Source: Octopus bimaculoides (lineage: Eukaryota). From it: a DNA stretch of 42,721 bases. Shown piece by piece: positions 1 through 30,803 of the stretch. Where the stretch lies: contig NC_069000.1 in NCBI RefSeq assembly GCF_001194135.2, forward strand, positions 34,097,584 to 34,140,304, read 5' to 3'. The notes beneath the pieces are model-generated. The model did no database searches and had not been told where the DNA came from. It saw only the letters and a list, made by a program, of their open reading frames with translations. Within the stretch, counting starts at the first letter, position 1, and every line of letters begins with the position of its first letter. Both the position numbers and the translations under genes were made by a program.

Positions 1-1700
1 GGCTGCTTAGAAAAGAATCACTGTATAAGCTTAGTGGTGTCTACCATGAGACATGATGATCTGGACTTCTGGAACAGCTTCATCTATCGAAGAGATTGAC
101 TCATCATCACCAATTATTGAGATTGAAAGAAGAGGTTAGTTTTGCTTTTGAGATATTTTCTGTTGCAGATAAGGATCACATCTGCAGACAACCAACTTGT
201 GATAACTATGTGATAGAAGATTCATGATGAATTGGAGGAAGCTAGTGCTGACCAGTAGAATATCTAATGAAATCTGTTTGCACTTGTGATGGAATGCAAC
301 TAATTGTTACCAAAGTTATTACTGTCCTGACGTGATCATCTACAAATGTCAACAAGACTGGTAAATTAGGAGGAAAGAAGTGGTTTCTTTTGCTTTGTTT
401 TCAGACATTTTCATATTTAATGAGTTGGACAAGGAACTAGTGATGATTATGATGGATTATCAGGAAGCTGATGCCAACTTATTGAACATCTGGAGATTGA
501 TGGTGACTGGCAACTGTGGAACATGAAGACTAGTGGCAAGTGTTGTAGAACATCTCATGGAAGCTGGTTGAAATATCTAATGAAAGCTGCTTACAAGAGA
601 ACCTCAACATAGCACAGTGATGTCTATTGTGAAACATGATGGTTGAGGATTTATGAACTTCTGAGACAGCTTTATATATTGAAGAGAATGTGGTTCATCA
701 TTGCTCAATTGTGAGACTGAAAGAAGAGGTGAGCTTTTCTTCCATAGATAAGGATAACATCTGTAATTAACAACCAGCTGGTGAGAATTCCCTAATGGAA
801 TATTTGTGACAAATTGATAACTATATGGTAGAGTCTGCTTGAGGATAATTGTCTGGTAGGATGTACTACAGTAGTTGATGCTTACTGATAGAACAGTCTA
901 CTGGAAACTAACAAAAAGGGGACAGACCATGTAATGAAAGTTGGTGGACATCTGCAAATGTTGACTGGTTGACTTTGGAAGAAAGAAGTGGTTTGTTTTG
1001 CTTAATTTCAGGCTTTTTGGAATCTAACAAGTCAGACAAACTTGTGACAACTTTGGAGCTTCTAGTGGAGATTTGAATCTGTGGTGAACTGCAATGGAAC
1101 ATCTAATGGAAATTGGTGGCAACTGTCTAACAGAAAATGGTAGAGACTCTGGAGAAGTTGATGGTGATTTGAACATCTGAGACAACTTAGTATATTGCAG
1201 AGACTAGCTTATCATTGCTGACTTGCGACACTGAAAGAAGAGGTGAGTTTTTCTTTTCAGATGTTTTCTTTTGCAGATAAGAATAACATCTGGAATTGAC
1301 AGCCAATTGGTGAAAACTGCTTGGAGTTTCTTTGTGGAAAATTGTCTGATGGATAACACAGTGGAAGATGGTGCTTACTAATAGAACATTTATGTACTGG
1401 AAAAATGGTAGAAAGGCTGTTGGCAGTTTTCATAGAATACAAATTTAGATTCCTGCTTATATACAACTGCAAATGTTAACAGGACTGGTGACTTGGGAAG
1501 AAAAATGTGGTTTGATTGCCTTGATTTTCAGGCTTTATCGTCCTTGTGACTGGTGAAACAAGAAACTGGAGGCAACTGTGGAATATCTAATGAAGACTGG
1601 TGCCAACTATGATGGAATATTTGAAGGAGATTGGTGGCAACTGTTACGGTACGTCTGATGGAGGTTGGTGGCAACTATGATGGTACATCTGATGGAGGCT

Positions 1701-2358
1701 GGCGGCAACTGTGATGGAACATCTTACGAAGAATGGTGGCAACTTTGGTGGAACATCTTACAAAGAATGGTAGCAACTGTGATGGAACATCTTATGAAGA
1801 ATGGTGGCAACCGTGATGGAACATCTTACAAAGAATGGTAGCAACTGTGATGGAACATCTTATGAAGAATGGTGGCAACTGTGATGGAACATCGTACAAA
1901 GAATGGTGGCAACTGTGATGGAACATCTTACGAAGAATGGTGGCAACTTTGGTGGAACATCTTACGAAGAATGATGGCAACTGTGATGGAACATCTTACG
2001 AAGAATGGTGGCAACCGTGATGGAACATCTTATAAAGAATGGTAGCAACTGTGATGGAACATCTTATGAAGAATGGTGGCAACTGTGATGGAACATCGTA
2101 CAAAGAATGGTGGCAACTGTGATGGAACATCTTACAAAGAATGGTGGCAACTGTGATGGAACATCGTACAAAGAATGGTGGCAACTGTGATGGAACATCG
2201 TACAAAGAATGGTGGCAACTGTGATGGAACATCGTACAAAGAATGGTGGCAACCGTGATGGAACATCTTACAAAGAATGGTGGCAACCGTGATGGAACAT
2301 CTTACGAAGAATGGTGTCAACTGATTATGGAACATCTTACGAAGACTGGTGGCAACTG
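1701..2358. repeat. 34-bp minisatellite (GGTGGCAACTGTGATGGAACATCTTACGAAGAAT), ~19 copies
   Basis: GAACATCTTA occurs at 1751 and 1785 (period 34); units are near-identical. Confidence 0.95.
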
Positions 2359-3552
2359 AAAAAATATCTAGGGACAAGTCACTTTATCTTTACAGGTATT
2401 TACTTTGCAGATGAGGATAACATTCAAATGTTGAGAGGAGTGGTAACTTTGGAGGGAAGAGTTGGCTCATTTTGCTTCATTTCAGAACATTTGTTTACTG
2501 GAAATTGGTAAAAAGGGTGACGACAATTTTCATGGAATGCAAGTTTAGATTACAACCAAAGTTATGATGGACCTACTTTTAAATATCTATGAATTTAACA
2601 GGACTGGTGACTTGGAAAGGAAGAAGTGTTTTGATTTCCTTGATTTTCAGGCTTTTTTAGTACGTGTAAATTGGTGAGACAAACTGCGGACAGACATTTG
2701 TGATGAAAGATCTGATGGAGGCGGGTGGCATCTGTGAATGAATATCCAAAGAAGAATTCCTGGAATTAGGATGGTGCACCTGATGGAGGCTGATGAGAAC
2801 TGGTGACAACTGCAATGGAACATCTAATGGAGGATAGTGGCAATTACAGTGGAACATCTGGAGATTGGCATATGTGATAGAGCGTATGACAATTGATGGC
2901 AAGCGAGATGGAATTTGTAGCAACTCTGATTGGACATCTGTTTGCTGATAACAACAGGGAGGAACTTCTAATGGTGACTAGTGGCAACTGTGATCAAACA
3001 ATAGACAGACTAGTGACAATTGTGATGGAACATCTACTGGAAACTGGTGGTGACTGGGGTGGAATATCTAATGGAGAATGATTGCAACTGTGGAACATCG
3101 GACAGCTGTAATGGAACATGTGAATAGTGATGTTGGCAAGCTCATGATGGAAGTGGAGGTACGCTTTGTTTTTGATTTCAGGTTTATCTTGTCTAGGCAG
3201 TGGATGGATGATACATAAAACAAGTCTCCAAGTACAACAGTGAAGTCTACTATGAAATTTGATGGCTGGTGGTGACTTGAACAGCTGAGACAACTTCATA
3301 TATTGCAGAGACTGTGGGTGAGTTTTTCTTTTGCAGATAATTTGGTGGAATCTCTGTGACGAAAATAGTCTGATGGATAATGCAGTGGAAGATGGTGCCT
3401 ACTAATAGAACTTTTAAACATCTGCAAATGTTTGCAAAACTGGTGTCTTGGGAAGAAAAAGTGGTTTGATTTCCTTTATTTTCAGGCGTTTTTGTATGTC
3501 TAATTGGAGAAATAAGAAACTGGAGGCAACTGTGGAACATCTAATGAAGACT

Positions 3553-3734
3553 GGTGCCAACTGTGATGGAGCATCTTACGAAGAATGGTGGCAACTGTGA
3601 TGGAACATCTTACGAAGAATGGTGGCAACTTGATGGAACATCTTACAAAGAATGGTGGCAACTGTTGATGGAACATCTTACGAAGAATGGTGTCAACTGA
3701 TGATGGAACATCTTACGAAGAATGGTGGCAACTG
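3553..3734. repeat. Second block of the same 34-bp minisatellite, ~5 copies
   Basis: Same unit and same downstream flank (AAAAAATATCTAGRGACAAGTCACTTTATC) as 1701-2358. Confidence 0.9.
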
Positions 3735-4745
3735 AAAAAATATCTAGAGACAAGTCACTTTATCTTTACAGGTATTTACTTTGCAGATGAGGATAACATT
3801 CAAATGTTGACAGGAGTGGTAACTTTGGAGGAAAGAGTTGGCTCATTTTGCTTTATTTCAAGCTTTTTATTATCTAATGAATTAGACAAGAAACTGGTGG
3901 CAACTGTGTATATAATTCTGATTGGAATTTAGCAGCTGTGGTGAAACATCTAATGGAGATTGGCAACTGTGATGTAACATCAGATGGAGACAGGTGACAA
4001 CTGTAATTGAACAATGGATGGAGAGGTGGGTGACCAGACATCTGATGAAAGCTGGTGGCAGTTAGAATGGAATGCAACTCATTGTTGTTATGATGGATCT
4101 GGCAATTGTGGTGGAACTTCTGATTTAGATTTGCAACTGTGGTGTAACATCTGTAGATTGACAACTGGGATGGACCATCCGATGGAGATATGGCAAGTAT
4201 CAGGCTATCTGGTGACTGGTGTCAACTATGATGGAACATGATGAAAGCTGGTGAAAACTGGTAGAAGATTTAATAGAAGCTGCTTACAAAAGAATCTCAG
4301 TATAGCATAGTGATGATTGTTGTGAAATGTGATGGTGATAATTTGAACTTCTGAGATAGATTTATATATTGAAAAAGACTGGCTGATCATTACCAAATTG
4401 TGAAACTGAAAGAGGTGAGTATCTCCAGGTATTTTATTTTGCAGATGAGAGGACACTGGTGACAACTGTATAATGGAAGAATTGTGACATTGATGGTGGC
4501 TATATGGTGGAGGTTTGGCAAAAAAAGTGACAGAACACTGAATGAAAGCTGCTGGCCATTCTGATGGAATGCAGTTCTTACCACAGTTATGATTGTCCTG
4601 CCCTACAAATGTTCACAGGGACTGATGACTTAAAAGGAAAGAAGTGGTATGTTTTGCTTCATTTTCAGGCTTTATTTATATTTGTAATGAAAACTGGTGG
4701 CAACTGGATCATCTGGAGGCTGGTGTAAAATCTCATGGAGGTCAG

Positions 4746-5856
4746 TGGCAACTGTGATGAAACATCTTGTGGAGACTGCTGGCGACTGTGATGGAACATC
4801 TCGTAGAGACTGCTGGCGACTGATGGAACGTCTTGTGGAGACTGCTGGTGACTGATGGAACATCTCGTGGAGACTGCTGGCGACTGTGATGGAATATCTC
4901 ATGAAGACTGCTGGTGACTGATGGAACATCTTGTGGAGACTGCTGGTGACTGATGGAACACCTTGTGGAGACTGCTGGCGACTGTGATGGAACATCTCGT
5001 AGAGACTGCTGGCGACTNNNNNNNNNNNNNNNNNNNNNNNNNNNNNNNNNNNNNNNNNNNNNNNNNNNNNNNNNNNNNNNNNNNNNNNNNNNNNNNNNNN
5101 NNNNNNNNNNNNNNNNNNNNNNNNNNNNNNNNNNNNNNNNNNNNNNNNNNNNNNNNNNNNNNNNNNNNNNNNNNNNNNNNNNNNNNNNNNNNNNNNNNNN
5201 NNNNNNNNNNNNNNNNNNNNNNNNNNNNNNNNNNNNNNNNNNNNNNNNNNNNNNNNNNNNNNNNNNNNNNNNNNNNNNNNNNNNNNNNNNNNNNNNNNNN
5301 NNNNNNNNNNNNNNNNNNNNNNNNNNNNNNNNNNNNNNNNNNNNNNNNNNNNNNNNNNNNNNNNNNNNNNCTGGCGACTGATGGAACATCTTGTGGAGAC
5401 TGCTGGCGACTGATGACACATCTCGTGGAGACTGCTGGCGACTGATGGAACATCTTGTGGAGACTGCTGGCGACTGATGGAACATCTTGTGGAGACTGCT
5501 GGCGACTGATGACACATCTCGTGGAGACTGCTGGCAACTGATGGAACATCTTGTGGAGACTGCTGGCGACTGATGACACATCTCGTGGAGACTGATGGAA
5601 CATCTTGTGGAGATTGCTGGCGACTGATGGAACATCTTGTGAAGACTGCTGGCGACTGATGGAACATCTCGTGGAGACTGATGGAACATCTTGTGGAGAC
5701 TGCTGGCGACTGATGGAACATCTTGTGGAGACTGCTGGCGACTGTGATGGAACATCTCGTGGAGACTGCTGGTGACTGATGGAACATCTTGTGGAGACTG
5801 CTGGCGACTGTGTTGGAACATTTCGTCGAGATTGTTGGCGACTGTGATGAACATCT
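4746..5856. repeat. 32-bp minisatellite (GGAGACTGCTGGCGACTGATGGAACATCTTGT) with 34- and 22-bp variants; spans an N gap
   Basis: TGCTGGCG occurs at 5401, 5433 and 5465. Gap at 5018-5370. Confidence 0.95.
5018..5370. other. Assembly gap (353 N) inside a VNTR
   Basis: Run of N. Confidence 1.
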
Positions 5857-8020
5857 AATGATGCTGGTGGCAGATCTAGAATGCCTAATTAAAGCTGCAA
5901 ACAAAAGAATCTTCACATAGCACACTGACGTCTGTTGTGAAACGTGATCACTGCTGATGATTTGAACATCTGACACAGCTTTATATTTTGGTACGACTGG
6001 CATGTTATTGCTGATTTGTGTGACTGAAAGAAGAGTTCTTTTTAGGTACTTTACTTTGCATATGAGAATGATAAGTGTGGTGAAACTTCTACTGGTAACT
6101 AGTGGCATCTGTTATGGAATGTCTACAGGAGACAGGTGGCAACCTTTATGGAAAATTTGAAAACTGGTGGAAACAAAATGATGGAACATCTGGTTACTGA
6201 TGCCAAATGTGGTGGCACGTGATGGAGACTGATAACTGTGGTAGAACATCTAATAGGAGGTGATGACAGCACTGAAATGACTAGTGAAATTTGCTTACAA
6301 AAGCAAAGCATAATGATGATTATTGTGAAACATGAAGATCTGTGAACATTTGAAACAGCTTTATATATTGAAGAGACTGGCTCATCATTAGCTATTTGTG
6401 AGGTGGAAAGAAGTGATTTTCTTTTCAGGTATTTTCTTTTGCAGATGGGGATGACATCTGCAATTGACAATCAACAGGTGACAACTGTTGGATGGAAGAT
6501 ATTGTGACAAATTGGTGGAGGCTAGTGCTGACTAACAGAACATCTAATAAAAGCTGTTGGCAGTTAAGATGGAATGCAACTAATTCTTACCAAAGTTATG
6601 ATTGCCCTGACATGAACATCTACAAGTGTTACCAAGACTGGTGACTTAGGAGGAAAGAAATGGTGCATGTTGATTCATTTTCAGGCTTTTGTATTTACAT
6701 CTGTAATGTGTCCAACATGAAACTGGTGACACCTGTGGTGTATCATCTGGAAGCCGGTGGCAACTGCGACGCAACTTCTGATGGAATCTGGTGGCAACTG
6801 CGATGGAACATATGGAGACTGATGTCAGTTTTGATAGAACACATAAGGAAGGCTGATGACATCTCTGAAATGCCTAATGAACTTTAGTGGAGCATCTGGA
6901 GACTGGTGAAAGCTGTCATGAAACATTTGGCTGGTGGAAATTGTGATAGAGCATCTAATGGAGACTGGTGCATTTCTTTTTTCAGATAGCTTCTTTTGCA
7001 GTTAAAAGTGACATCTATTTGATGACTGGTCTTAGCTAATAGAAAATTATCTACTGGAAATGGTAAAATGGATGTCAGGACATCTAATGGAAGTTTTATG
7101 CAACTACAATGGAATGCATCTAATGATTATGATGGACCTGCCTTAAACATCTACAAATATCAACAGGATTGATAACATTAGATGAAAGAAGTGACTCATT
7201 CTGTTTCATTTTCAGGCTTTTTGATAACCTAATGAATCAGATATGGGTGGCAACTGAGAGAACCTCTGGAGAATGGTGACTACTGTGATGGAACACATAC
7301 CAAAGACTGGTTGAAAGTGTGGTAGAACCTGATGAAAGCTGCTAACAAAATCTCCACAAAGCACAGTGATGACTATTGATGATTTGGACATTTGGAAGAG
7401 ATTCATTTATCAAGTCATTGCCAATTTATGTAAGTGAAAGAAGAGGAATTCTTTTCAGATATTTTCTTTTGCACATGTGTATGTCATCTGTGATGGAACT
7501 TCTATTGGGGACTGGTGGCAGCTGTCCTGGAACAAAATGAAGACTTGTGACAACTGGTAGAACATTCAATGGAAGCTGGTGGCATCCCTGGAATGTTAAA
7601 TGAAAGTTGTGAAGGAACATCTGGAAACTGGTGGCAGCTGTGATGGAACATCTAATGAGAACTGGCAAGTCTTTCTTTTAGGTTTTTCTTTCGCAGATAA
7701 GGATGTGATCGACAATTGACTGGTGATGTCTGTGTGATGGAACATTTCTGAGAAGTTGGTGATAACTATTTGGTAGAATCTCCTTGTTAATTTTCTGATG
7801 GAATATACGATGGAAACTGCTGCTGATGAACTGAACATTGACTGGAAATTGGTAAAATGGGTGACAGGACATCTAAAGAAAGCTGTTGGCAATTGTGATA
7901 GAATGTGACAAATTGAACCTGTTGTAAACATCTACAAACATCCAAAGGACTGGTAACTTCAGAAGAAAGACAAGGCTCATTTTGCTTCATTTTCAGGCAT
8001 TTTTATATCTAAAAGAAACT

Positions 8021-8239
8021 AGTGGCAACTGTGTGGATCATCTGGAGACTGGTGGCAACTGCGATGGAACGTCTGGAGACTGGTGGCAACTGCGATGGAA
8101 CGTCCGGTGGCAACTATGATGGAACGTCCGGTGGCAACTATGATGGAACGTCTGGTGGCAACTATGATGGAATGTCTGGAGACTGGTGGCAACTGTGATG
8201 GAACGTTTGGGGACTGGTGGCAACAGCATTGGAACATCT
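8021..8239. repeat. 31/24-bp minisatellite (GGAGACTGGTGGCAACTGCGATGGAACGTCT / CCGGTGGCAACTATGATGGAACGT)
   Basis: GGAGACT at 8044 and 8075 (period 31); CCGGTGG at 8104 and 8128 (period 24). Confidence 0.9.
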
Positions 8240-8466
8240 AATGGAGACTGGTGAGTCTTTCTTTAAAGTATTTTCCTTTGCAGATGACGATGACATCTAT
8301 AATAGACAACCAACTGGTGATAGATGTGTGATGGAACATTTGGACACTGGTGGTGTATCTGGAGGCTGGCAACTGCGATGCAGCATCTGAAGATTGAATG
8401 CAACAGTGATGGAACATATGGCAACTGTGATGGTTCATCGGGAGACTGGTGGAACATCTGGACACT

Positions 8467-8710
8467 GATGGTGGTAGTGGTGGAACATCTGGTGACAGTG
8501 ATGAAACATCTGATGACTGATGGTGGCAGTGATGGAACATCTGATGACTGATGGTGGCAGTGATGGAACATCTGATGACTGATGGTGGCAGNNNNNNNNN
8601 NAGTGATGGAACATCTGATGACTGATGGTGGCAGTGATGGAACATCTGATGACTGATGGTGGCAGTGATGGAACATCTGATGACTGATGACAAAAGTGAT
8701 TGAACATCTG
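8467..8710. repeat. 31-bp minisatellite (GATGGTGGCAGTGATGGAACATCTGATGACT), with a 10-N gap at 8592-8601
   Basis: TGGTGGCAG at 8521 and 8552. Confidence 0.9.
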
Positions 8711-11700
8711 GAGATTAGCAAGCTCTTTTTAAGTATTTTCTCTTCTTGCTGAGGATGATATTTACCATTGACTATTAACTGATGGCAACTTTGTGATGGA
8801 ACATTTAATGAAAGCTTGTTGCAATTGTAATTGAATGCAACTGATGATTATTATGAAAGTTATGATGACTCTGTCTTTAGACATCCACAGTTGTTGACTG
8901 ACTGCTGAGCTGGGAGACATGAAGTTGTTTGTTTTGCTTCATTTTTAGGCTCTTCGATATCTAATGAGTCTGTCCATAAGTGCAATGGAAACTAATAACA
9001 GTTGTAGTAGGTCATCTGGTATAGAGTTGGTGGCAACTGGCAGGACAGTTAATAGAAACTGATGACCTAGCAACAGTGGCTGGACATCTGATGAAAGTTG
9101 ATTGCAAATGTGATGACCATGTAATGGAAACTGGCTTGGGAGATTGAAAGAAGTGAAATTTGTTTTTAGATGTTTTTTTATTGCAGATACAAAAGTTCTG
9201 ATTCAGTGACTGTGTATCTGGTACCAGGTGGTTATTGTACTGTATAAATCATAAACTGCTGGACTATTCATTCAAGAGAGGAAGAGAAAAGTGGAATTCT
9301 AATAGTGACATAATTGAAGAAACTGACATTCACATGGAACATTTTTGAACGGAAAATGGTGAGTTTTTGGTGAAATATCTGGCTACTGATGACAATATGA
9401 TGAAGCAATCTACAGGAAGCTGGTCTAACATATCTGAAAAGAAAGTGTAATGGCTCTGTTGTAGAACATTGATGACAATTGTGTTACATGGTAAATAATG
9501 AATGCTTGTGAAGGACATGGAATCGTAGCTAGTGACAAATGCAACAGGCTATCTAATGGAAGTGATGACTTTGTGGAACATTAAATGGAAACTTGTGTTA
9601 AATATCCTAGAACAGCTTAAAGTTGTAATTGACTGTGAGGAAGAAGTGGAAGTATGATTTGCTTCAGTTTCAGGTTATTGGTAGCTGATCAATCACTGGC
9701 ATTCGCATATTAGTGAAAGTGAACGTGCATGCAACTGTAAAGGAACTGCTAATGACTGATTAGATGTCCAAAGGAAGCTGATGACAGCCGTGGAAAATCT
9801 GGAAGAAGTGGGTTTTTCTTTTGCAGATATCCTGTCATTGTGTGGAAATTGTGTTTCTGGTGCCAGATGTTTAACAACGGTTGTCAACTGCTGAACTATA
9901 CATGTGAGAGGAAGAGAAAGAATTGATTGTGAATATATGAGGTTGACATCTGTAATTGACAAAACTGGTGAAAAGTGGGGTAGAATATTTATTACAAGTT
10001 GGTGATGAATGTGGTGGTATATCTAATGGAAGCCATCGAAACTGATGGAGCATATCTGAAAGGAAAGTGGCAACAGCTGTGATGTACATCTCTGAGGACA
10101 GTTTGTGTAACACAATAAATGATGGAGTATGGAATGAAAGTTGGTGACAGCTATGGCAGATTATCTGATGAAAGCTAATGAGAACTCTACTAGAATGTGC
10201 AATTGAAGCTGGTGACAACTGAGATGGAATGTCTGTTGTAAGCTGGTGATTAATTTGACAGAATATCTAATGGAAGCAACTGTGATAGGCCATCCAGTGG
10301 AACCTTGTGAAATCTCAGAGCATTACAGAAAACGTGGCGAGTGTCGTGGAATATCTTAAAGTTGTGTCTAACAGACTGGCCTGTGCAATAAACGGATGTG
10401 GAGGTATTATTTGCTTCACTTTCAGGTTGTTGACATCTGATCAATCATGGGGACCCTCTTATTAACAAAAGTGAATGTGCAGATGCATGTCAGAGAACTG
10501 GTGATGACTGATGGAACATCCAAGGGAAGCTGATGTAGTCTTATGAACAACTGTGATGGAGCATCTAATAGAAACTAGCAAGTGTCATGGAATATCTTAA
10601 AGCGATGTCTGACAGACTGGCCTATGATACAAAAAGTGGAGGTATGTTTTGCTTCATTTACAGATTATCTGATCAATTGCTGGTATCCACCTATTTACCA
10701 GAAGTGAATGTGCGTGTGTGACTGACAAGAATCTATTGACAACTACACTACAACATGCAAAGGAAGCAAATGACATGTCATTGACAACAGTGGGACATTT
10801 AATGGAATCTGGTGACCTGAGAGACAAGAAGTGGAGTTTTTTTTGTTTCAATTTCAGGATTATTGTAATGCGACCATTTGGCAGTCAACTGATATTTAAA
10901 ACAAAAGAATTTCCTTATAGCAGAGTGATGTCTAATGTCCAACATCATATATGGTGGCTGGTGATCTGAACATTTGAGACAACCTTTTGCATTGAAGAGA
11001 CTGGCACATCATTGCTTATTTGTGAGATTGAAAGAGGTGGTGAGATTTTCTTTTCAGCTAGTTTCTGTTGCAGTTATCCTGTCATTGAGTGGTACTCACA
11101 TGTCTAGTACCAGGTGTTTGGTGTGTAACAGCAAAGATTGGCAACTGCTGAACCATGAACATGGAGGGGAAATAAAATTGTGACAGATGGTGAAAGTGAA
11201 TATGTTGACATCCATAATTAATGAAGCTGGTGACAACTTTGTGAAGGAAGATCTGGTTACTGATGATAATGTGAAGGAGCTGGAATGTCTTATTATATGC
11301 TGGTGACGAAAGTGGTAGTATATTCAATGGAAGCTGGTGACAGTTGTATGGTGGAAAATCTAAGGACGACCTGTGATGCAATAAATTAATGGATGCTGTT
11401 GAACATGAAATGGAAGCTGGTGGCAATTGTGATTGAATATGATGAAAGGTATTTACTAACTTCATGAAGGACCTCTTTGGCACCTAAAGTTGTGGCTGAG
11501 TATTGACCTGTGAAAGAAAAGAAGTCGAGGTTTGTTTTGCTTAATTTTCAGGCTATTGGCATCAAAATGTGTTGATTGTGAAAGTGACTATAAAGGTGAT
11601 GTCAATAATTGACAAAACTGGTGGCAACTTTGTGATGAAGCAGTGTAATAGAATCTGGTACTGACTGAGATGACTGAAACATCTGATGGAAGCTAATAAG

Positions 11701-14098
11701 AACTGTTGGAATGTCTAGTGGAAGCTGGCAACTGACAGACCGTTTAGCAGAAGCAATTGGAGGTATATTTTTGCTTCATTTTCAGAATATCTACACATTA
11801 AAGAAAGTGAATGTGGAATTGGAGATAACTGATGAAACATCCAAAGGAAGCTGAGTATCTAATTTTGACACATTTCAACAGAATGGAATATGTGCAACTA
11901 AAGAGTAATACCAGTTTTATAATGGTCCTATTACTGATGGAGACTAGTGATGACTGTGCCATCTAAGGCTGTGACTGTGTGATGACCTGTGAAACAAAAG
12001 TGGAGGCTTGTTTTGCTTCATTTTCAGGCTATTTGTATCAGATCATTAGCAGCTACATATTAACAACAGTGACTGGAAATAATTAACTGTGATGGAACAT
12101 CCAAATGAAACTGATGATGAGAACAAAGCATCTAACGACTGTGATGCACCAAATGGAAAATGGTAACAATTGTGGTGAAATATGTGCATCTGAAGATGAA
12201 TACCAACCTTATGATGGCCCTGCATTGAGGTATCTACATTTGTAGCTTGTTGATGATGACCTGAGAGACAAGAAGTGGAGATATATTCTGTTTCATTTTC
12301 AGGTTTATTGTCATTTGAATAATGCTTGGCAGTCAATTGTTGAGATGTAACACAAGAGAATTTCCACATAGCACTGATGTCTAGTGTCCAATATATGTGA
12401 TAGCTGGTGATGATTTGAACTTCTGGAGGCAGATTTGTGTATTGAAGAGAGTGTGACCTGTCATTGCTGATTTGTGAAACTGGAAGAAGAGGTGGGTTTT
12501 TCATGTGCAACTATAGATAAGTATGGAATATGGAGCAGAGAAATTGTGACTGCATGAAGACTATGGAAGTATAGAGCAGAACCTGATGATAGCCCTGTGA
12601 CTGAGTGGTGACTTGTGAAGCAAAAAGAAGTGGAGGCTTGTTTTACTTTATTTTCAGGCTATTGGTATCTACATATTAACAAAATTGAATGTGTATGTAA
12701 CTAACAAGAAACTTGTGGAAACTGTGACAGAACATGAAAGAAGTTGGTGGCAATTGTGGACCATCTTATGGAAGCTGGTGAAAACTGATGAAAATAACAC
12801 TACCCTGAGGTATCTAAGATTGTTGCTTACCATTGTGACTTGAGGGACAAGAAGTGGAGGTAGATTTTGTTTGATTTTCTTTATGTGACTGATCTTTGCC
12901 AATCAGGTCGTAATATGTAAAACAGTATTTCTACATACAATGGCAATGTCTAATGATTGCTTTGAATATCTGAAAGATTTATGTATTGAAGAGACTGTAG
13001 CACATCAGTGCTTATTTGTAAGCTTGAAAGAAGAGGTGAGTTTTTTTTTTCTTTTCAGATATTTTCTTTTGCAGATACCATGTCTTGGTGTGGGGACTTG
13101 TGTATCTGGTACCAGGTGTTTACTGTGTAACAACAATGATTATCAACTATTGGACTTCAGATGTGAGAGAGGAAAAGAAAAATCCATGGATTGTGAAAGA
13201 GAATATATGAGGATATCTACAATTGACACAGCTGGTGAGAACTATGTGGTGGAACATTGTTGACAAGAAACTGGTGGCAAGCGTCTTCATGAAACATCTC
13301 AAGATTGACGGCTGTGTTGTGAAATACCTACTGGAAACTGGGGACAAACTAGTGGAGCAGCTGATTGAAGTTGGTGAGAACTGTAATTGTGCATAAAATC
13401 AAGACAACTATCGTGCTGCAAACAGAAGCTGATGACAACTAGTGGTGGCAACTATGATGGAATATTTAATAGAAGCTAGTGATGAATATGACAAAAAAAT
13501 ATTTAATGGAAACTGGTGACATTCATTTCCAATTTCATTAGTATCTTATCTTGCATAGGCAAGGCCAATATAAGAGACAGTAAAATGGAGACAAAGACAT
13601 TCAGTGTTCAGCACATGATGTACTATCTTTCACTTACTGCTTTTTCCACTACAACACATTGTGATTACATCGTAGATCAGAAGCAGCTTTTGTTTGATTG
13701 ATTTTCAGTTATATAGGAATCTCAAAGATAATTTTAATAGTCAACTGGCGTTATGTACAATAACAGCATATATGCATTTAGCAATTGTAAAATGAAGCTT
13801 GTACATGTCTGATTGCAAGCTAGTGACAGATCATCTTCAGGAAATTTGTGAGTTATAAATCATAAATGGAAATTGATGATGGAGCATACACTATAGAAAT
13901 TGATAACATGACAAAACATTTAATGAAAGCTTGTGTCAATTAAGTGGTAGAACATTAGTGGAAATTAATAGCATCTGCTTGATGAAACATCTATAAATTG
14001 ATTGGTAATTATATGTTGGAACAACCTTTACAAAACACTGGTGACAACTTCAATAGAGAATATGTAAGTGAAGACTTATGAAATGTTCCAGAGAGAAA

Positions 14099-14152
14099 GC
14101 AGATGGAAGATATCATGAGGAATATGTCAGCCTCATGATATCTTCCACCTGC
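14099..14152. other. Near-perfect hairpin: 22-bp stem, 10-nt loop (pre-miRNA-sized; function unknown)
   Basis: Arms GCAGATGGAAGATATCATGAGG (14099-14120) and CCTCATGATATCTTCCACCTGC (14131-14152) pair at 21/22 positions. The mismatch is A:C on + and a G.U wobble on -. Confidence 0.9.
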
Positions 14153-15775: not shown

Positions 15776-16679
15776 TACAACATTTGTGATTGGACATAGT
15801 GACAATGGGTCAAGAAATAGGAGACACTACATATTCATCCACCAACTAGAAATAGTTAAATCTTCCTGGGAATGATATGTACAGAAAAGATGAAGTTGAG
15901 AATCCATAATTGAGGTTCTGTGACTTGACATGATGTCAATAGGAACACAATGCGTCTGAGGAGGAGAGTAACTGTGACTGACATGTGACAACTGGTACAT
16001 GGGAAAGAATAACTGTGACTGGCATATGGAGACTACAGGGACATGGAGCAAATCAACTGTGACTTGGATTTGGTGACAACAGGAACATGAAGCAAAGGCA
16101 TATGAGAGGGCAACAGAAACATGGAGAAGAGCAATTGTGACGTAGAAGTGTTGACAACAGGAGCAAGCAGAAGAGCAACTGTGATGAGAATCTAGGGACA
16201 ACTTCAAGATGGAGTGGAGCAACTATAACTGGAGTGTGATGACATCGGGGAGATAGAAGTGAAGAACTGTGATAGCATTGACAGAGGGGCATGGAAAAGA
16301 ACACTCATATCTGGTGTGTGATGACAACTGGTACATCAGGAAAAGCAACTGTCAAGAGAATTTGACTGCATGAACATGAAGCAGAGCAAATGTGACACTG
16401 CTGTGCTGACAACAGAAAGGTGGATGAGAGCAACTATCAGAGGTAGTGACAACAGGAGGATGCAGAAGATAAAGTGCAGTCAAGATGTGGTAGTGGCAAT
16501 TGGAATTTGGAGCAGAGCAACTTCAATTGAAGTGTGGAGGCAGCAGGAAGATGGAATTCATTAACTGAGACTAGAATATAGTGATATGAAGAAAAGTGAG
16601 TGCAACTGTAGCTGAGGACTGATGATGATAGAAAGTGACTAATGCATGTGGTGACAAGAGTGTGTGATAAATGCACCAT

Positions 16680-18080
16680 GGAGCAGAGCAACTATGACTT
16701 CGACTTGGTGGGNNNNNNNNNNNNNNNNNNNNNNNNNNNNNNNNNNNNNNNNNNNNNNNNNNNNNNNNNNNNNNNNNNNNNNNNNNNNNNNNNNNNNNNN
16801 NNNNNNNNNNNNGGAATGTGGTAACAACAACAAACGGAACAGAGCAACTGTGACTGGGATTTTGTGACAGCAAGAACATGAAACAGTGCAACTGTGACTG
16901 GAATGTGGTAACAACAGCAAGACGGACCAGAGCAACTGTGACTGGGATTTGGTGACAGCAAGAACATGCAGCAGACCAACTGTGACTGGGATTTGATGAC
17001 AGCAAGAACATGAAGCAAAGCAACTGTAACTTGGATTTGGTGACTGCAAGAACATGGAAGAGAGCNNNNNNNNNNGCAAGAACATGGAAGAGAGCTACTA
17101 TTACTTAGATTTGGTGACAGCAAGAACATGCAGCAGACCAACTGTGACTGGAATGTGGTAACAACAGCAAGACAGAACAGAGCAACTGTGACAGCAGGAA
17201 CATGAAGCAGAGCTACTATTACTTAGATTTGGTGACAGCAAGAACATGCAGCAGAGCGACTGTGACTGGAATGTGGTAACAGCAGCAAGATGGAACAGAG
17301 CAACTGTGACTGCGATTTGGTGACAGCGGGAACATGAAGCAGAGCAACTGTGACTGGAATGTGGTAAGAACACCAAGATGGAATAGAGCAGCTGTGACTG
17401 GGATTTGATGGCAACAAGAACATGGAGCAGAGCTACTATTACTTAGATTTGGTGACAGCAAAAACATGAAACAAAGCTACTATTACTTAGATTTGATGAC
17501 AGCAAGAACATGAAGCAGAGCAACTGTGACTGGGATTTGATGATATCAGGAACATGAAGCAGAGAAACTGACTGGAATGTGGTAACAGCAAGATGGAACA
17601 GAGCAACTGTGACTGGAATGTGATAACAACAGAAAGATGGAACAAAGTAACTGTGAGTGGGGTTTGATGACAGCAAGATCATAGAGCAGAGCTACTATTA
17701 CTTAGATTTGGTGACATCAGGAACATGAAGCAAAGATACTATTACTTAGCTTTGGTGACATCAGGAACATCAAGCAGAGCAACTGTGATTGGAATGTGGT
17801 AACAACAGCAAGATGGAACAGAGCAACTGTGACTGGGATTTGGTGACAGCGGGAACATGAAGCAGAGCAATTGTGACTGGGATTTGATGGCAGCAAGAAC
17901 ATGGAGCAGAGCTACTATTACTTAGATTTGGTGACAGCAGGAACATGAAGCAGAACAACTGTGACTGGGATTTGATGACAGCAAGAACATGAAGCAGAGC
18001 AACTGTGACTAGGATTTGATAACAGACATATGGAGCAGAACAAGTATGACTGCGATTTGATGACAGCAGGAACATGGAGC
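16680..18080. repeat. Young 44-bp minisatellite within array B, three unit subtypes, ~30 units; N gaps at 16713-16812 and 17066-17075
   Basis: GAGC unit start at 17298, 17342, 17386 and 17430. Subtypes: ..TGTGACTGGAATGTGGTAAC.., ..TGTGACTGGGATTTGGTGAC.., ..CTACTATTACTTAGATTTGG.. Confidence 0.93.
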
Positions 18081-21000
18081 ACAGAAACTGTAACCAGAAT
18101 GTGGTGACATCTACAAGTTCTAGCAGAGCAACTTTCTGGGTTTTGATGACAAGAAGCTGGTGACAACATCAAGGTGGAGCAGAGCAACTATGGCTTAGGT
18201 GGCAATAGGTGTGTGAAGTAGAGCAACTGCAGCCAGAATTTTGTGATGACAGCAAGTTAGAGCAGAGCAAAGCAACTGTGACTGGGGTTTGGTGACAGCA
18301 GGAACATGGAGCAGAGCAACTGCGACCAGAATGTGGCGTCAACAAAGTAGAACAGGAACATGGAGCAGAACAATTATGACTGGAATCTGTAAACTACGGA
18401 GCATGGAGCAGAACTGCTGTGAAGTCAGTTTGGTGACAAGAAGAGTGATTGTGACTGATGCAGAAAAGGGGCGGCAGTTTGGTGACAAGAAGGGTGATTG
18501 TGACTGATGCAGAAAAGGGGCGGCTGTGGTATAGAGGTGTTGACAGTAGGAACAAAAGTAAGAGCAAGTGTAACAGAATGTGGTGGCAACAGTAAGGTAG
18601 AGCAGAGCAACTTCAACTGGAGTCTGGTGACAGTAGGAAGAATAAAATGAGCAACTGTGATAGCATTGACAGAGAAGTGACTAGGATTTATTGACAACAA
18701 GAGCATGAAGCAAAGCAAATGTCACTGGGTTGTGGTGGCAATAGGAATATGGATGAGCTTTGAGTTCAGGTGACACTACAGAAGGAAGATGAAGTGGAAC
18801 AGTCGTCAGGTGATGATGACTAGATGGAGTATAGCAACTTGACTGAGAATTGGTTTCAACAAGAATGTGGAGCAGAACAACTGTGATATGTGATGGCAAC
18901 AAGGACATTGAGAAGAGCAACTGTGAGTAGAATGTGTTGATAACAGCAAGGTGGAGTAGAGCACTTATGACTAGACTGTGGAACATGGAGCAGAGTAACA
19001 GTGACTGGAGTGACATAACAACAGGAATGTGCAGCAAGGGACAGCAGGAAGATGGATGAGCAACTGTGACTGGCATGTAATGATATGAAGATACGTAAGT
19101 GCAACTCTACTTGAGAACTGATGATGATAAAGAGTAACTGCATGTGGTAATGACCACACCATGGAGCAGGGCAACAATGGCTAGGATCTGGTGAAAAGAG
19201 AAACATGGAGCAGAGCAACTGTGATGGATGTGTTGACAAAAATATGGAGAAGGGAAACTGTGACATAAAGGTGTTGACAACAGGAACAAACAGAAGAGCA
19301 ACTATGACTAGAATGTGGTGACAATTGCAAAATGATGAATGGGACATGGAGCAGATCAATTTCAACTGGAGTGTAGTTACAGCAAGGGGAGGGAGCAAAG
19401 CAACTGTGAATTGAGGTGTCATGACCACAATTTGACATAGAACAGCAGTGACAGCAGAGCAACAATGACGTTTGTGACGGCAACTGGAAGATTTAAAGAG
19501 TAACTGAATGACATGTGACAACTGGTATATGGTGAAGACCAACTGGAATATGCAGACATGGAGCAGCTGTGACATAAAAGTGCTGACAACAGGAAGAAAC
19601 AAAAGAGCAACTATGACCAGAATGTAATGAAAATAGCAAGATGGAGTGGAGCATCTTTGACTGGAATGTGGTGATGAATGGAACATGGAGCAGAGCAACT
19701 TTAACTGGTGTATGATGGGAGCAGGAAGATGGAAATGAATGTTTGGCAAGAAAAGTATTTGAGAAGAGCAACTGTGGGCTATGGTCATCAAAGCAGCATG
19801 GAAGAAAGCAAGTGTGAGTTAAAGTGCAGGAAGATGGCAGAAAATGAAGTGGCAACGAGAACATGAAGCAGAGCAATGGTGACTTGGATTTGGTGACAAC
19901 AGGAAGATGAAGAAGAGCAACTGTGATGGATGTGTTGGCAACAAGAACAAGGAAGAGCTGCTGTGACATGAATGTGTTGACATCAGGAACAAACAGAAGA
20001 GCGGCTGCGACTGGAATGTGGTGACAGCAGGAAGATAAAAGTGAGCAACTATGAATTGTGGTGGGGTGACCACAAGATGACATAAAAAGTGGTGACAGCA
20101 TGGCAACAGAAAGATTGAAGTAGAGCAACTGTAGGATGTAGTGATCAGAAAAGAGCCATTGCATCTGGCATATGGTGACAATGAGTACATGGAAGAGAGC
20201 AGCTATACCATGAATGGAATATGGAAACTGCAGGAACATGAACAAAGCAAGTGTAACTTGGATTTGGTAACAGGAAGATGAAGAGCAGCTGACAGGTGTG
20301 TTGGCAATAAGAACGTGAAGAGCAGCTGTGAGATCGAGGTGTTGAGAACATGAACAGACAGAGAAGCAGCTGTGACTTGAATGTGATGAAAACAAGATGG
20401 AATGGAGCAGAGCAATTTTAACAGGAAATTGGTGACGACAAAAAGATTGGAGCAGAGCAACTGTGGGATATGGTGATCAGAGCATCATAGGAGAGAGCAA
20501 CAATAAAAGGAATGTGACAACAGGAAGATGGATGATAGCAAGTGTTGGTTGAGTTGCTGAGACTGCAGGAAGATGAAGCAGAGGAACTGTGATGTATGTG
20601 ATGGCAACAAGATTTGGAGAACAGCTGTAAATGGTACATGGGAGAGAGTGACCATGACTGGAATGTGGAAAATACAGAAACATGGAGCAGAACAATCTTT
20701 ACTGGAATATGGAGGCTGCAGGAACATGAAGCTGAGCAAATGTGACTTGGATTTGGTGACAACAGGAAAATAAAAAAAAAGCAACTGTGACTGGCATGAG
20801 GTGACAACTGGTACATGAGAGAGAGACCAACTGACTGGAATATGGAAACTACAAGAACATGGAGCAGGGCACCTGTGATGGCAACAGGAACATTGAAAAG
20901 AGTAGCTATGACTAGAGTATGGTGAGGTGACAACAGCAAGATGGAGTGGAACATAAAGCAGAGCAACTTTAACTGGAGTGTAGTGACAGCAGGAAGAGGG

Positions 21001-27939: not shown

Positions 27940-28160
27940 GGCGTTGAGCTGGCAGAATCGTTACCGCACCAAGAAAAAATGCTTAGCGGTGTTTCTTCCA
28001 ACTTCACGTTCTGCGTTCAAACGCTGCCATAGTCGACTTTGTCTTTCATCTTTTCGGGGTTGATAAAATAAGTACCAGCTGAACACTGGAGTCGATGTTA
28101 TCGACTTGCCCCTCCCGTACAATTGCTGGCCTTGTGCCAAAATTTGAAAGCAATATATAT
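27940..28160 (+). mobile_element. SINE family 1, near full length
   Basis: A-box-like GAGCTGGCAGAATCG, B-box-like GTTCAAA, and the GTCGACTTTGTCTTTCATC domain. Confidence 0.88.
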
Positions 28161-30587: not shown

Positions 30588-30803
30588 TAATAATGATTTC
30601 AAATTTTGGCACAAGACCAGCAAGTTCGGGGAAGGGGTAAGTCGATTACAACGACTCCAGTGCTTAACTGGTACTTTTTTTATCGTCCCCGAAAGGATGA
30701 AAGGCAAAGTCGACCCTGTCGGAATTTGACCACAGAACGTAAAGATGGACGAAATGCCGCTAAGCATTTTACCCGGTGTGCTAACGACTCTACCAGCTCG
30801 CCG
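30588..30803 (-). mobile_element. SINE family 1, near full length
   Basis: GGATGAAAGGCAAAGTCGAC..GGAATTTGA..CTACCAGCTCGCC. Confidence 0.9.

What the first reader, a model, noticed from the sequence alone, without database searches (positions are those of the whole stretch)
383..13074. About 40 micro-intron-shaped GT...AG cassettes (22, 18 and 16 nt) embedded in a purine-rich satellite
SEEN: pyrimidine islands on + read as a 5' splice site fused directly to a 3' splice site. Type 1 has ~22 copies of 21-23 nt, consensus G|GTATGTTTTGCTTCATTTTCAG|G (383-404, 1510-1531, 3464-3485, 4647-4668, 6663-6684, 8927-8948, 9652-9673, 10404-10425, 10642-10663, 11530-11551, 12006-12027, 12636-12657). Type 2 has ~18 copies of GAG|GTGAGTTTTTCTTTTCAG (18 nt) followed by RTATTTTCTTTTGCAG (16 nt) (135-168, 1243-1276, 6968-7001, 11040-11073, 13036-13074). 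They match splice consensus as well as the real CTU2 sites here and by eye are the best-kept part of each unit. Flanking segments have stops in all frames. KNOWN: introns this short are rare in most animals but normal in ciliates, nucleomorphs and dicyemids, the renal parasites of octopuses. INFERENCE, options: a spliced repeat lncRNA with ultra-short introns; a U1/U2AF-binding scaffold or telescripting array; an amplified fossil of a short-intron (e.g. dicyemid) gene; or chance capture in one ancestral unit, then tandem amplification. Equal length is expected by descent alone.
Basis: partly seen in the sequence, partly recalled or inferred. Interest (0 to 1): 0.8.

Follow-up and report, generated by a model that had tools for sequence, protein, structure and literature searches.

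The report
Splice-like islands in a tandem repeat
About forty short T-rich islands that look like an intron's two ends fused together are real and are the best-kept part of a long, decayed tandem repeat, but they descend from one ancestral copy, only their acceptor-like half is conserved, and nothing supports their removal as 16-23-base introns.

Summary
The cassettes exist: 22 (perhaps 23) M1 loci and 20 M2 loci, all on the + strand, between 135 and 13708. They sit in a one-orientation, C-poor hierarchical tandem repeat: a 31-34-nt monomer organised into 0.5-2-kb units. That repeat tiles window 1 to about 13.5 kb and then fades by about 14.1 kb.

M1 and the first half of M2 are paralogues of one module (GAAAGAAG block, T-rich tract, CAG). 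The second half of M2 is a 15-16-nt tandem duplication. The roughly 40 copies are therefore one sequence multiplied by descent.

The cassettes are the three best-conserved windows of the unit. The signal lies in the pyrimidine tract plus CAG and in the upstream purine block, which take about half the substitutions of the flanks. The donor end is not conserved: 8 of 22 M1 copies lack GT and only 6 have GT with a +3 purine.

Removing the cassettes opens no reading frame. The host gene nearby has kb-sized introns. Animals that do have introns under 30 nt show reduced signals without pyrimidine tracts.

Verdict: an ordinary but intricate repeat array carrying acceptor-like modules, not micro-introns. 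A role as splicing-factor binding or conventional splice sites on a + strand RNA remains possible and untested.

The parts
1..14100 (+). Hierarchical tandem repeat array; it runs off the left edge of the window. 0.5-2-kb units built on a 31-34-nt monomer (CTGGTGGCAACTGTGATGGAACATCT...). G 26%, C 14%.
   Evidence: A 489-state unit HMM gives contiguous hits from 28 to 13522 plus one weak outlier at 13934-14075, all +. Monomer-like matches cover 42% of 1-13600, 143 on + and 0 on -. Composition.
383..404 (+). M1 copy, GT..AG, 22 nt (GTTTCT donor)
991..1011 (+). M1 copy, GT..AG, 21 nt
1510..1531 (+). M1 copy, GT..AG, 22 nt
2464..2485 (+). M1 copy, no GT (GGCTCA..), AG kept
2628..2650 (+). M1 copy, GT..AG, 23 nt
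3464..3485 (+). M1 copy, GT..AG, 22 nt
3841..3862 (+). M1 copy, no GT (GCTCA..), ends CAAG
4647..4668 (+).
6663..6684 (+). M1 copy, GTGCAT..CAG, 22 nt
7194..7215 (+). M1 copy, no GT (ACTCA..), AG kept
7975..7996 (+). M1 copy, no GT (GCTCA..), AG kept
8927..8948 (+). M1 copy, GT..TAG, 22 nt
9652..9673 (+). M1 copy (right-zone subfamily), GTATGA..CAG
10404..10425 (+). M1 copy, GTATTA..CAG
10642..10663 (+). M1 copy, GTATGT..CAG
10836..10857 (+). M1 copy, GTTTTT..CAG
11530..11551 (+). M1 copy, GTTTGT..CAG
11763..11785 (+). M1 copy, GTATAT..CAG, 23 nt
12006..12027 (+). M1 copy, GC..AG (no GT)
12281..12302 (+). M1 copy, AT..AG (no GT)
12636..12657 (+). M1 copy, GC..AG (no GT)
12864..12885 (+). M1 copy, decayed: neither GT nor AG
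13687..13708 (+). Possible 23rd, decayed M1 copy (CTTTTGTTTGATTGATTTTCAG)
135..168 (+). M2 double (18+16), GTTAGT..GAG / AT..CAG
729..747 (+). M2 single, GTGAGC..TAG, 19 nt
1243..1276 (+). M2 double (18+16), GAG|GTGAGT..CAG / AT..CAG
2378..2410 (+). M2 double (18+15), GTCACT..CAG|GTATTT..CAG
3318..3336 (+). M2 single, GTGAGT..CAG, 19 nt
3754..3786 (+). M2 double (18+15), GTCACT..CAG|GTATTT..CAG
4415..4444 (+). M2 double (14+16), GTGAGT..CAG|GTATTT..CAG
6035..6061 (+). M2 double, decayed (GTTCTT..TAG|GTACTT..CAT; no final AG)
6413..6444 (+). M2 double (16+16), GTGATT..CAG|GTATTT..CAG
6968..7001 (+). M2 double (18+16), GTGCAT..CAG / AT..CAG
7446..7474 (+). M2 double, no GT and no final AG (GAATTC..CAG / AT..CAC)
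7665..7696 (+). M2 double (17+15), GCAAGT..TAG|GTTTTT..CAG
8251..8283 (+). M2 double (18+15), GTGAGT..AAG / TA..CAG
8722..8753 (+). M2, decayed (GCTCTTTTTAAG / TATTTTCTCTTCTTGCTGAG)
9153..9186 (+). M2 double (17+17), GTGAAA..TAG / AT..CAG
9808..9826 (+). M2 single, GTGGGT..CAG, 19 nt
11040..11073 (+). M2 double (18+16), GTGAGA..CAG / CT..CAG
12492..12516 (+). M2 single, GTGGGT..TAG, 25 nt
13036..13074 (+). M2 double (23+16), GAG|GTGAGT(T10)..CAG / AT..CAG
13516..13558 (+). M2, decayed outermost copy (26+17)
1579..2358 (+). Run of the 34-nt monomer (22.9 copies), between an M1 and the next M2
3533..3734 (+). Run of the 34/35-nt monomer (about 6 copies)
4755..5844 (+). Run of the 32-nt monomer, interrupted by the assembly gap 5018-5370. 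Same repeat phase on both edges; copy number unknown.
8018..8253 (+). Run of 24/31-nt monomers
8469..8710 (+). Run of the 31-nt monomer, interrupted by the 10-N gap 8592-8601. Register is kept after removing the N and a 2-nt overlap.
16000..23300 (+). Neighbouring, related 44-nt purine-rich repeat array. It shares GCAACTGTGA and GGAACAT with the monomer but has no pyrimidine islands.

Best explanation
Window 1 to about 14.1 kb is an old tandem repeat in a single orientation. A G-rich, C-poor 31-34-nt monomer is organised into higher-order units of about 0.5-2 kb. Each unit carries copies of one module: a purine block (GAAAGAAG), a few bases that often read GT, a T-rich tract, and CAG.

M1, M2a and M2b are paralogues of that one module, and M2b is a 15-16-nt tandem duplicate of M2a's 3' part. 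The roughly 42 cassettes are therefore a single ancestral sequence multiplied by unit amplification (shown). They are not introns (inferred). The donor-like end decays like any flank, a 16-23-nt span is far below what an ordinary animal spliceosome can bridge, and removing them yields no ORF.

The pyrimidine tract plus CAG and the purine block decay about half as fast as the rest of the unit (shown). I read that most likely as mild constraint on an acceptor-type or pyrimidine-tract protein-binding module in a + strand transcript. It could also be a by-product of these being the only non-monomer landmarks, and so the only parts always aligned to their true counterparts. Both readings are inferences.

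If the sites are used at all, they would pair conventionally over hundreds of bases. The M2 donor to the next M1 acceptor is typically 248-332 nt. They would not pair within a cassette.
For: - Array structure and single orientation.
- Paralogy: M1 and M2a align 25/32 including the purine block, and M2b is a 15-nt-period duplicate.
- Census: AG in 21/22 M1 copies, GT in 14/22, GT with +3 purine in 6/22. The M2 second unit starts with GT in 6/16.
- Conservation: cassette windows rank 1-3 of all windows in the unit.
- Tree-aware substitution counts: M1 tract+CAG 1.18 against 2.22 steps per column in flanks (P 0.002); M2 first tract+CAG 1.08 against 2.14 (P 0.004); M1 GTTTGT 2.67 and M2 GTGAGT 1.67, neither different from flanks.
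- Units found by flank-only queries are each followed by a cassette: 9 of 9 for M1, and 10 of 10 for M2 if the hit at 3279-3314 is counted, where an internal deletion puts the projected window past the cassette at 3318.
- No ORF before or after cassette removal.
- The host's CTU2-like exons are separated by 2.8 and 4.2 kb, with ordinary splice sites.
- Literature: animal introns under 30 nt are known only in myxobolids and Dicyema, with reduced signals and little or no pyrimidine tract (PMC13644364). The minimal productive donor-branchpoint distance is about 46-50 nt in human constructs (PMC11291888).
- Distance from the M2 donor to the next M1 acceptor.
Against: - Pure neutral descent does not predict the about 2-fold slower change of the tract+CAG and purine block.
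- It also does not predict that all three pyrimidine islands are the top three conserved windows, nor the absence of indels in a slippage-prone T-rich tract.
- No transcript data, no orthologous array from another species and no genome-wide census of the unit could be obtained.
- 30 of 42 loci still have an outer GT...AG, so sequence alone cannot exclude use of a subset.
Confidence: 0.7

Rival explanations
1. Multivalent splicing-factor scaffold or decoy. The array is transcribed from the + strand as a nuclear repeat RNA. Its about 40 acceptor-like pyrimidine tracts would bind U2AF/PTB/ELAV-type proteins. The about 9 good GTG(A/G)G-type donors would bind U1. The purine blocks and 165 UGGAA pentamers would bind SR-type proteins. 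All would do so without productive splicing.
For: The modules are the best-conserved parts of the unit and evolve about 2-fold more slowly than the flanks. Orientation is strictly single strand. TGGAA occurs 165 times on + and 3 times on -. The three island types share only T-rich tract plus CAG, not an exact word, as expected for tract binders. Known analogues exist: PNCTR (PMC6224606) and HSATIII (bioRxiv 10.1101/681056).
Against: There is no evidence of transcription. Substitutions inside the tracts are not significantly biased towards staying pyrimidine (48% against 39%, P 0.13). No RNA structure signal and no Rfam family. Most such arrays are inert.
Confidence: 0.2
2. Repeat-exon long non-coding RNA spliced conventionally. 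The M2 donor (GAG|GTGAGT) is joined to the next M1 acceptor (TTTTCAG|G) across about 250-330 nt. The monomer-rich segments between M1 and M2 are then exons, and each cassette is just two neighbouring splice sites lying back to back.
For: M2-to-next-M1 spans are 248-332 nt in 8 of 15 cases. The expanded monomer runs lie mostly in the M1-to-M2 segment. A purine-rich, enhancer-like block is conserved just upstream of the M2 donor.
Against: Only 9 of 20 M2 loci keep a GTG(A/G)G-type donor. The 27-nt AG-free zone before the M1 CAG contains no good branch site, read from the sequence. No transcript evidence.
Confidence: 0.1
3. True micro-introns: a subset of cassettes is excised as 16-39-nt GT-AG introns from a + strand RNA.
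For: 30 of 42 loci keep an outer GT...AG. Lengths are tightly clustered: 21-23 nt for M1 and 33-34 nt for most M2 doubles.
Against: The M1 GT evolves like the flanks and is missing in 8/22 copies; 8 of the 14 GT copies have T at +3. Equal length follows from descent. No ORF is restored. Nearby genuine introns are kb-sized. Known animal micro-introns have reduced signals and no pyrimidine tract, and occur genome-wide in two parasitic lineages only (PMC13644364). The donor-branchpoint space constraint is about 46-50 nt (PMC11291888).
Confidence: 0.02
4. Amplified fossil of a short-intron gene, for example a horizontally acquired dicyemid gene.
For: Only the short GT...AG shape.
Against: Stops in all + frames, with or without the cassettes. 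The flanks are built from the same 31-34-nt monomer as the rest of the array. Dicyema introns lack the long pyrimidine tract that makes up these cassettes (PMC13644364). No protein homologue was found for array ORFs.
Confidence: 0.01
5. Coding repeat on the minus strand. The long stop-free frames on - would encode a repetitive S/C/H/P-rich protein, and the cassettes would be coding.
For: The minus strand has many ORFs of 70-150 aa, longer across gaps. Stop-triplet density is 0.037 on - against 0.069 on +.
Against: All three minus frames are open together. Monomer periods of 31, 32 and 34 nt are not multiples of 3, and cassettes are crossed in different frames in different units. This is the expected by-product of a C-poor + strand. 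No protein homologue was found.
Confidence: 0.02
6. DNA-level element. The island, on either strand, would be a binding site for a chromatin or transcription factor, or a preferred breakpoint for unequal exchange that keeps getting homogenised.
For: Conserved short core with no indels.
Against: The three island types differ in exact sequence and share only T-richness plus CAG, which is unlike a sequence-specific DNA site.
Confidence: 0.05

Closest known systems
Minisatellite / higher-order (macrosatellite-like) tandem arrays with a G-rich strand
   Same: Head-to-tail copies in one orientation. A 31-34-nt monomer with strong G>C strand asymmetry. Variable monomer runs nested in larger units. 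Chi-like GCTGGTGG words occur 6 times on + and never on -. The resemblance to classical minisatellite cores rests on my own knowledge.
   Different: Each higher-order unit carries two to several pyrimidine islands with splice-acceptor shape, and these decay more slowly than the monomers.
PNCTR, a short-tandem-repeat-enriched lncRNA that recruits many PTBP1 molecules (PMC6224606)
   Same: Many copies of a short pyrimidine-rich protein-recognition motif spread along a repeat-derived sequence. This is the way the array would work if transcribed.
   Different: Transcription, protein binding and nuclear localisation are unknown here. The motif here is a T-rich tract plus CAG embedded in G-rich repeats, not (Y)CUCUCU-type short tandem repeats.
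HSATIII satellite RNA of nuclear stress bodies, (GGAAU)n, which sequesters SR proteins (bioRxiv 10.1101/681056)
   Same: Purine-rich tandem repeat. UGGAA-type pentamers are very frequent on one strand (165 against 3).
   Different: HSATIII is a simple 5-nt satellite. Here UGGAA is one word inside a 31-34-nt monomer. No evidence of expression or stress induction.
Ultra-short spliceosomal introns of myxobolid cnidarians, Dicyema japonicum and ciliates (PMC13644364; PMC6736024)
   Same: Length class (median 22-27 nt in myxobolids) and GT...AG ends in about 70% of the cassettes.
   Different: Those introns interrupt ORFs genome-wide, and have reduced signals (GTa...AG) with little or no pyrimidine tract. 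These cassettes are non-coding, pyrimidine-tract-rich and have a decaying donor end. They sit beside a gene with kb-sized introns.
Recursive splice sites (ratchet points): juxtaposed 3' and 5' splice sites (own knowledge, not tested)
   Same: Six M2 loci read (Y)nYAG|GT at the junction of the two half-units, five of them YAG|GTA (2395/2396, 3771/3772, 4428/4429, 6045/6046, 6428/6429) and one TAG|GTT (7681/7682).
   Different: Only a minority of copies do so. The consensus at that junction is CAG|AT (A in 43% of copies). No long host intron is known.

Membership tests
Spliceosomal ultra-short intron | GT at the 5' end, kept by selection | tested here: not met
   M1: GT in 14/22, with +3 purine in 6/22. 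GT columns take 2.5 steps per column against 2.22 in flanks. M2: the first GT is present in 17/20 and slow (0.5 steps per column), but the hexamer is not different from flanks. The second half-unit has GT in 6/16.
Spliceosomal ultra-short intron | AG at the 3' end | tested here: met
   M1 21/22. M2 terminal AG in 18/20.
Spliceosomal ultra-short intron | Interrupts a reading frame or mature RNA that is restored by its removal | tested here: not met
   The longest + strand stop-free run is 124 aa before and 111 aa after removal of the GT...AG cassettes (a few M2 intervals used in that run were a few bases off; exact coordinates are), and the stop-triplet density of the unspliced + strand is 0.069.
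Spliceosomal ultra-short intron | Occurs in a lineage whose introns are generally tiny and whose splice signals are reduced | tested here: not met
   Neighbouring CTU2-like exons are separated by 2841 and 4157 nt, with ordinary sites. The cassettes have full pyrimidine tracts, unlike the reduced signals reported in PMC13644364.
Spliceosomal ultra-short intron | Exon-exon junctions seen in RNA | not testable with these tools
   No transcript collection for this organism was reachable. Protein and metagenome look-ups returned nothing related.
Tandem repeat array (minisatellite within higher-order units) | Head-to-tail copies of a unit in one orientation | tested here: met
   TRF arrays of period 31-34 nt. 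63 unit-HMM hits, all +. 143 monomer hits, all +.
Tandem repeat array (minisatellite within higher-order units) | Higher-order periodicity with shared landmarks in register | tested here: met
   M2 and M1 mostly alternate through about 9.2 kb and then fall into irregular clusters, with typical spacings of 230-330 nt.
Multivalent RBP-recruiting repeat RNA (PNCTR / HSATIII type) | The locus is transcribed | not testable with these tools
   No RNA data available.
Multivalent RBP-recruiting repeat RNA (PNCTR / HSATIII type) | High density of one short protein-recognition motif, kept better than the spacers | tested here: inconclusive
   About 42 tract+CAG modules in 13.6 kb evolve about 2-fold more slowly than flanks. 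There is no significant bias towards keeping pyrimidines, and the copies are not independent.
Functional conventional 3' splice site | Pyrimidine tract followed by YAG | tested here: met
   Consensus TTTTGCTTCATTTTCAG|G and TTTTCTTTTGCAG|A.
Functional conventional 3' splice site | Usable branch site upstream, with no intervening AG | tested here: inconclusive
   Read from the consensus. The AG-free zone before the M1 CAG is about 27 nt, and its only A lies 8 nt from the AG (TTCAT). Better GUGAC/CUAAU-type sites lie 40 nt or more upstream, behind several AGs.

The most novel reading that the evidence does not exclude
A subset of the cassettes (those keeping GT with a +3 purine and AG, such as 4647-4668, 10642-10663, 1243-1276 and 13036-13074) is really excised as 16-39-nt introns from a + strand repeat RNA. 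This would be in an animal whose ordinary introns are kb-sized, which would imply an unknown way of recognising introns far below the accepted size limit. A less extreme but still new reading is listed among the rivals at about 0.2: the array is an invertebrate counterpart of PNCTR/HSATIII that titrates splicing factors.
Probability: 0.02. Interest if true: 0.9.

Novelty: new member of a known kind. Interest (0 to 1): 0.25.

Why it matters
As it stands, this is a caution. Where a G-rich purine stretch meets a T-rich stretch, the junctions read GT and YAG by construction, and tandem amplification then produces dozens of equal-length 'introns'.

What remains interesting is that the acceptor-like half, together with a purine block, is the slowest-evolving part of a repeat of at least 13.5 kb. 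It is strictly co-oriented with a second related array and with the downstream CTU2-like gene.

If the locus is transcribed, it would be a ready-made candidate for a repeat RNA with about 40 splicing-factor landing pads in an invertebrate. That is cheaply testable with existing RNA-seq.

Tried and rejected
1. External relatives. A minus-strand array ORF and two CTU2-like exon queries found nothing in the protein collection. A metagenome scan with the monomer core gave 0 hits. A scan with the M1 core gave 5 single hits whose flanks are unrelated to the unit, so they are chance matches. No cross-species test was therefore possible, and the host taxon could not be verified.
2. Rfam at gathering thresholds: no family in the whole window.
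3. Hairpin idea (purine block pairing with the tract): folding energies are no better than shuffles, z from +0.5 to -1.0. Rejected.
4. Coding readings on either strand: rejected.
5. Pyrimidine-retention test for a tract-binding constraint: not significant.
6. Complementary-substitution asymmetry as a footprint of transcription. A>G exceeds T>C 1.32-fold, but the same bias is expected from misaligned columns in a G-rich, C-poor sequence. Uninformative.
7. Literature searches for an octopus or cephalopod satellite or minisatellite of this kind found nothing relevant.
8. Pfam on single ORFs of 23-42 kb found nothing. Concatenated CTU2-like exons gave only a weak PP-loop hit, E 0.005, below the cut-off.

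Full report
**What is there**

Window 1 to about 14.1 kb is a tandem repeat lying entirely in one orientation. Tandem Repeats Finder reports runs of a 31-34-nt monomer at 1579-2358, 3533-3734, 4755-5844, 8018-8253 and 8469-8710 (consensus such as TGGAACATCTTACGAAGAATGGTGGCAACTGTGA).

I built a 489-position profile by iterating nhmmer from window 1100-1600. It gives 63 hits that tile 28-13522 almost without gaps, plus one weak outlier at 13934-14075. All hits are on the + strand. Monomer-like matches cover 42% of 1-13600, with 143 hits on + and none on -.

Composition is A 31%, T 29%, G 26%, C 14%. That is 56.6% purine, so 'C-poor' describes it better than 'purine-rich'. Copies are old: long self-alignments are 70-80% identical, and flank distances between units are about 0.37.

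**Assembly gaps, tested first**

- Gap 5018-5370 lies inside the 32-nt monomer run. The last 9 nt before it and the first 9 nt after it are both CTGGCGACT.
- Gap 8592-8601 lies inside the 31-nt run. The spacing of the motif GATGGAACATCT across it is 43 instead of 31, which equals the 10 N plus a 2-nt overlap.
- In both cases only the number of monomers is unknown. No cassette is near a gap edge.

**Census of the cassettes**

- M1: 22 loci, plus a decayed candidate at 13687-13708.
- M2: 20 loci, 16 with the double structure and 4 single.
- The M1 core TTTTGCTTCATTTTCAGG with up to 3 mismatches occurs 17 times in 388-12658, against 0.07 expected for the whole window. The M2 15-mer occurs 30 times against 6.1 expected.

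The intron shape is much less uniform than the finding suggests.

- In M1, AG is present in 21/22 copies, a GT lies 21-23 nt upstream in 14/22, and that GT is followed by a +3 purine in only 6/22.
- The majority donor reads G|GTTTGT, not GTATGT.
- Eight M1 copies begin GC, GG, AC or AT.
- In M2 the outer GT...AG is intact in 16/20. Five loci have an exact GTGAGT, and nine fit GTG(A/G)G (GTGAGT, GTGAGC, GTGAGA or GTGGGT).
- The '16-nt intron' begins with GT in only 6/16 doubles.

**One module, multiplied**

The M1 consensus with its upstream block aligns to M2a at 25 of 32 positions. The shared sequence is GAAAGAAG-N-GGT..GTTT...TTTTCAG. M2b is a tandem duplicate of the 3' part of M2a, with period 15 (TRF at 1249-1278 and 13047-13077). 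Four loci still have the single form (729, 3318, 9808, 12492).

The about 42 cassettes are therefore one ancestral sequence carried along by unit amplification.

**Is the cassette conserved beyond the flanks?**

Yes, but only part of it.

- In the profile alignment the three best 17-nt windows of the whole unit are TTTGCTTCATTTTCAGG (0.91), TATTTTCTTTTGCAGAT (0.87) and AAAGAAGAGGTGAGTTT (0.84). The background mean is 0.72 and the best other window reaches 0.84.
- This is not a base-composition effect. Consensus-T columns score 0.87 inside the cassettes and 0.76 outside, and A, C and G also score higher inside.
- The copies are related, so I also counted substitutions by parsimony on neighbour-joining trees built from the flanks:

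| Segment | Steps per column | Comparison with flanks |
|---|---|---|
| M1 flanks | 2.22 | reference |
| M1 tract+CAG | 1.18 | P about 0.002 |
| M1 GTTTGT | 2.67 | not different |
| M1 GT alone | 2.50 | not different |
| M2 flanks | 2.14 | reference |
| M2 first tract+CAG | 1.08 | P about 0.004 |
| M2 GTGAGT | 1.67 | not significant |
| M2 second tract | 1.75 | not significant |

- The purine block just upstream of the M2 donor is about as slow as the tracts, read from the per-column string.
- Queries made from flanks only, with cassette and purine block excluded, found 9 M1 units and 10 M2 units, each followed by a cassette. For the M2 hit at 3279-3314 an internal deletion makes the projected window overshoot; its cassette starts at 3318.

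Caveats:
- The cassettes were flagged partly because they looked conserved.
- The copies are few and not independent.
- The flanks are made of monomers that can be exchanged or aligned out of register, which inflates their apparent divergence.

**Why they are not micro-introns**

1. The donor end decays like neutral sequence (above).
2. The + strand is dense in stop triplets (0.069 against 0.047 expected at random). Its longest stop-free run is 124 aa before and 111 aa after the GT...AG cassettes are removed.
3. The CTU2-like exons on the same strand (34902-35039, 37881-37991, 42149-42280) are separated by 2.8 and 4.2 kb, with ordinary sites: cag|A, gtaagg, gtattt, gtgagt. The CTU2 assignment rests on my memory of the human protein plus a weak PP-loop Pfam hit.
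4. In animals, introns under 30 nt are documented only in myxobolid cnidarians and Dicyema japonicum. There they occur genome-wide, with signals reduced to GTa...AG and a missing or very short pyrimidine tract (PMC13644364; mean Dicyema intron 38 bp, PMC6736024). The cassettes here are the opposite, being mostly pyrimidine tract.
5. In human constructs, splicing fails when the donor-branchpoint distance falls below about 46-50 nt (PMC11291888).

The same points, together with the monomer-built flanks, argue against a fossil dicyemid gene.

**What the modules could do**

Sequence alone cannot show function. No RNA structure stands out, and no Rfam family matches.

If the + strand is transcribed, the modules have the shape of conventional sites. 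M1 and M2b are acceptors. M2a is a donor preceded by a purine-rich block. The M2 donor to the next M1 acceptor spans 248-332 nt in 8 of 15 cases, an ordinary intron size, and most expanded monomer runs lie in the M1-to-M2 segment.

Alternatively they could bind tract-recognising proteins without splicing, as in PNCTR (PMC6224606). The UGGAA-rich monomers (165 on + against 3 on -) recall HSATIII (bioRxiv 10.1101/681056). I put the chance of any such RNA-level role at roughly 0.3, and of true micro-intron excision at about 0.02.

**Minus strand**

Long open frames on the minus strand are a by-product of the C-poor + strand. All three frames are open together, and the monomer periods are not multiples of three. 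Cassettes are crossed in different frames in different units, and no homologue exists in the protein collection.

**Limits**

No relative of the array, no transcript and no annotation of the source genome could be reached. The decisive tests (RNA mapping, orthologous arrays, genome-wide census) remain to be done.

**Verdict**

The intron reading is not supported. The thing is a new example of a known kind, a hierarchical tandem repeat, with a mildly intriguing conserved acceptor-like module.

Noticed in passing
window 16000-23300: A second array of a 44-nt unit (GTGACAGCAGGAACATGAAGCAGAGCAACTGTGACTGGGATTTG). It is 66.6% purine, has the same strand bias, and shares GCAACTGTGA and GGAACAT with the 31-34-nt monomer, but has no pyrimidine island. 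It contains gaps at 16713-16812 and 17066-17075. Minus-strand ORFs of up to 311 aa here are open in all three frames together, which is a composition effect.
   Followed up: partly
window about 15260-15420: A frameshifted fragment of a mariner-type transposase lies between the two arrays. Pfam PF01359 Transposase_1 matches in two frames, E 1e-4 and 4e-3, both below the curated cut-off. It suggests the region is old enough to have taken a transposon insertion.
   Followed up: partly
window 1-13600, + strand: The pentamer TGGAA occurs 165 times on + and 3 times on -. By my own estimate from base composition, about 24 would be expected. Chi-like GCTGGTGG occurs 6 times on + and 0 on -. UGGAA/GGAAU repeats bind SR-type proteins in human satellite III RNA.
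   Followed up: no
window 2395/2396, 3771/3772, 4428/4429, 6045/6046, 6428/6429, 7681/7682: In six M2 loci the junction of the two half-units reads (Y)nYAG|GT, five of them YAG|GTA and one (7681/7682) TAG|GTT. This is the order of signals seen at recursive splice sites (acceptor directly followed by donor). The consensus at that junction is CAG|AT.
   Followed up: no
window 34902-35039, 37881-37991, 42149-42280 (+): Three exons resembling CTU2 (SGGPSS PP-loop motif...LADIAQGRGA...), with canonical splice sites and introns of 2841 and 4157 nt. The array lies about 12-35 kb upstream on the same strand. Only a weak Pfam PP-loop hit was obtained.
   Followed up: partly
window 42617-42721 and about 38900-39000: A perfect 26-nt tandem repeat (GTGCTTTTTATGTGGCACCAGCACCA, 4 copies) runs to the right edge of the window. 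A similar sequence, translating as ...FYVAPAPV..., also occurs near 39 kb, so both may belong to one dispersed element.
   Followed up: no
window about 28000-28400 (-), 30600-30770 (-), 33100-33200 (+), 34300 (+): Several copies of a short dispersed element whose translation reads ...PRKDERQSR...N(L/A)..ER... in various frames. It looks like a SINE, and it resembles octopus SINEs as far as I remember them. Not tested.
   Followed up: no
window 41250-41990 (-): ORF fragments that look like the carboxy-terminal part of a retroelement reverse transcriptase (e.g. MDWQLKLAVDKCTTMHFGRKNP...). Pfam found nothing at E 0.01 or below.
   Followed up: partly
window 31008-31596: A further assembly gap (589 N) in the intergenic stretch between the arrays and the CTU2-like exons.
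   Followed up: no
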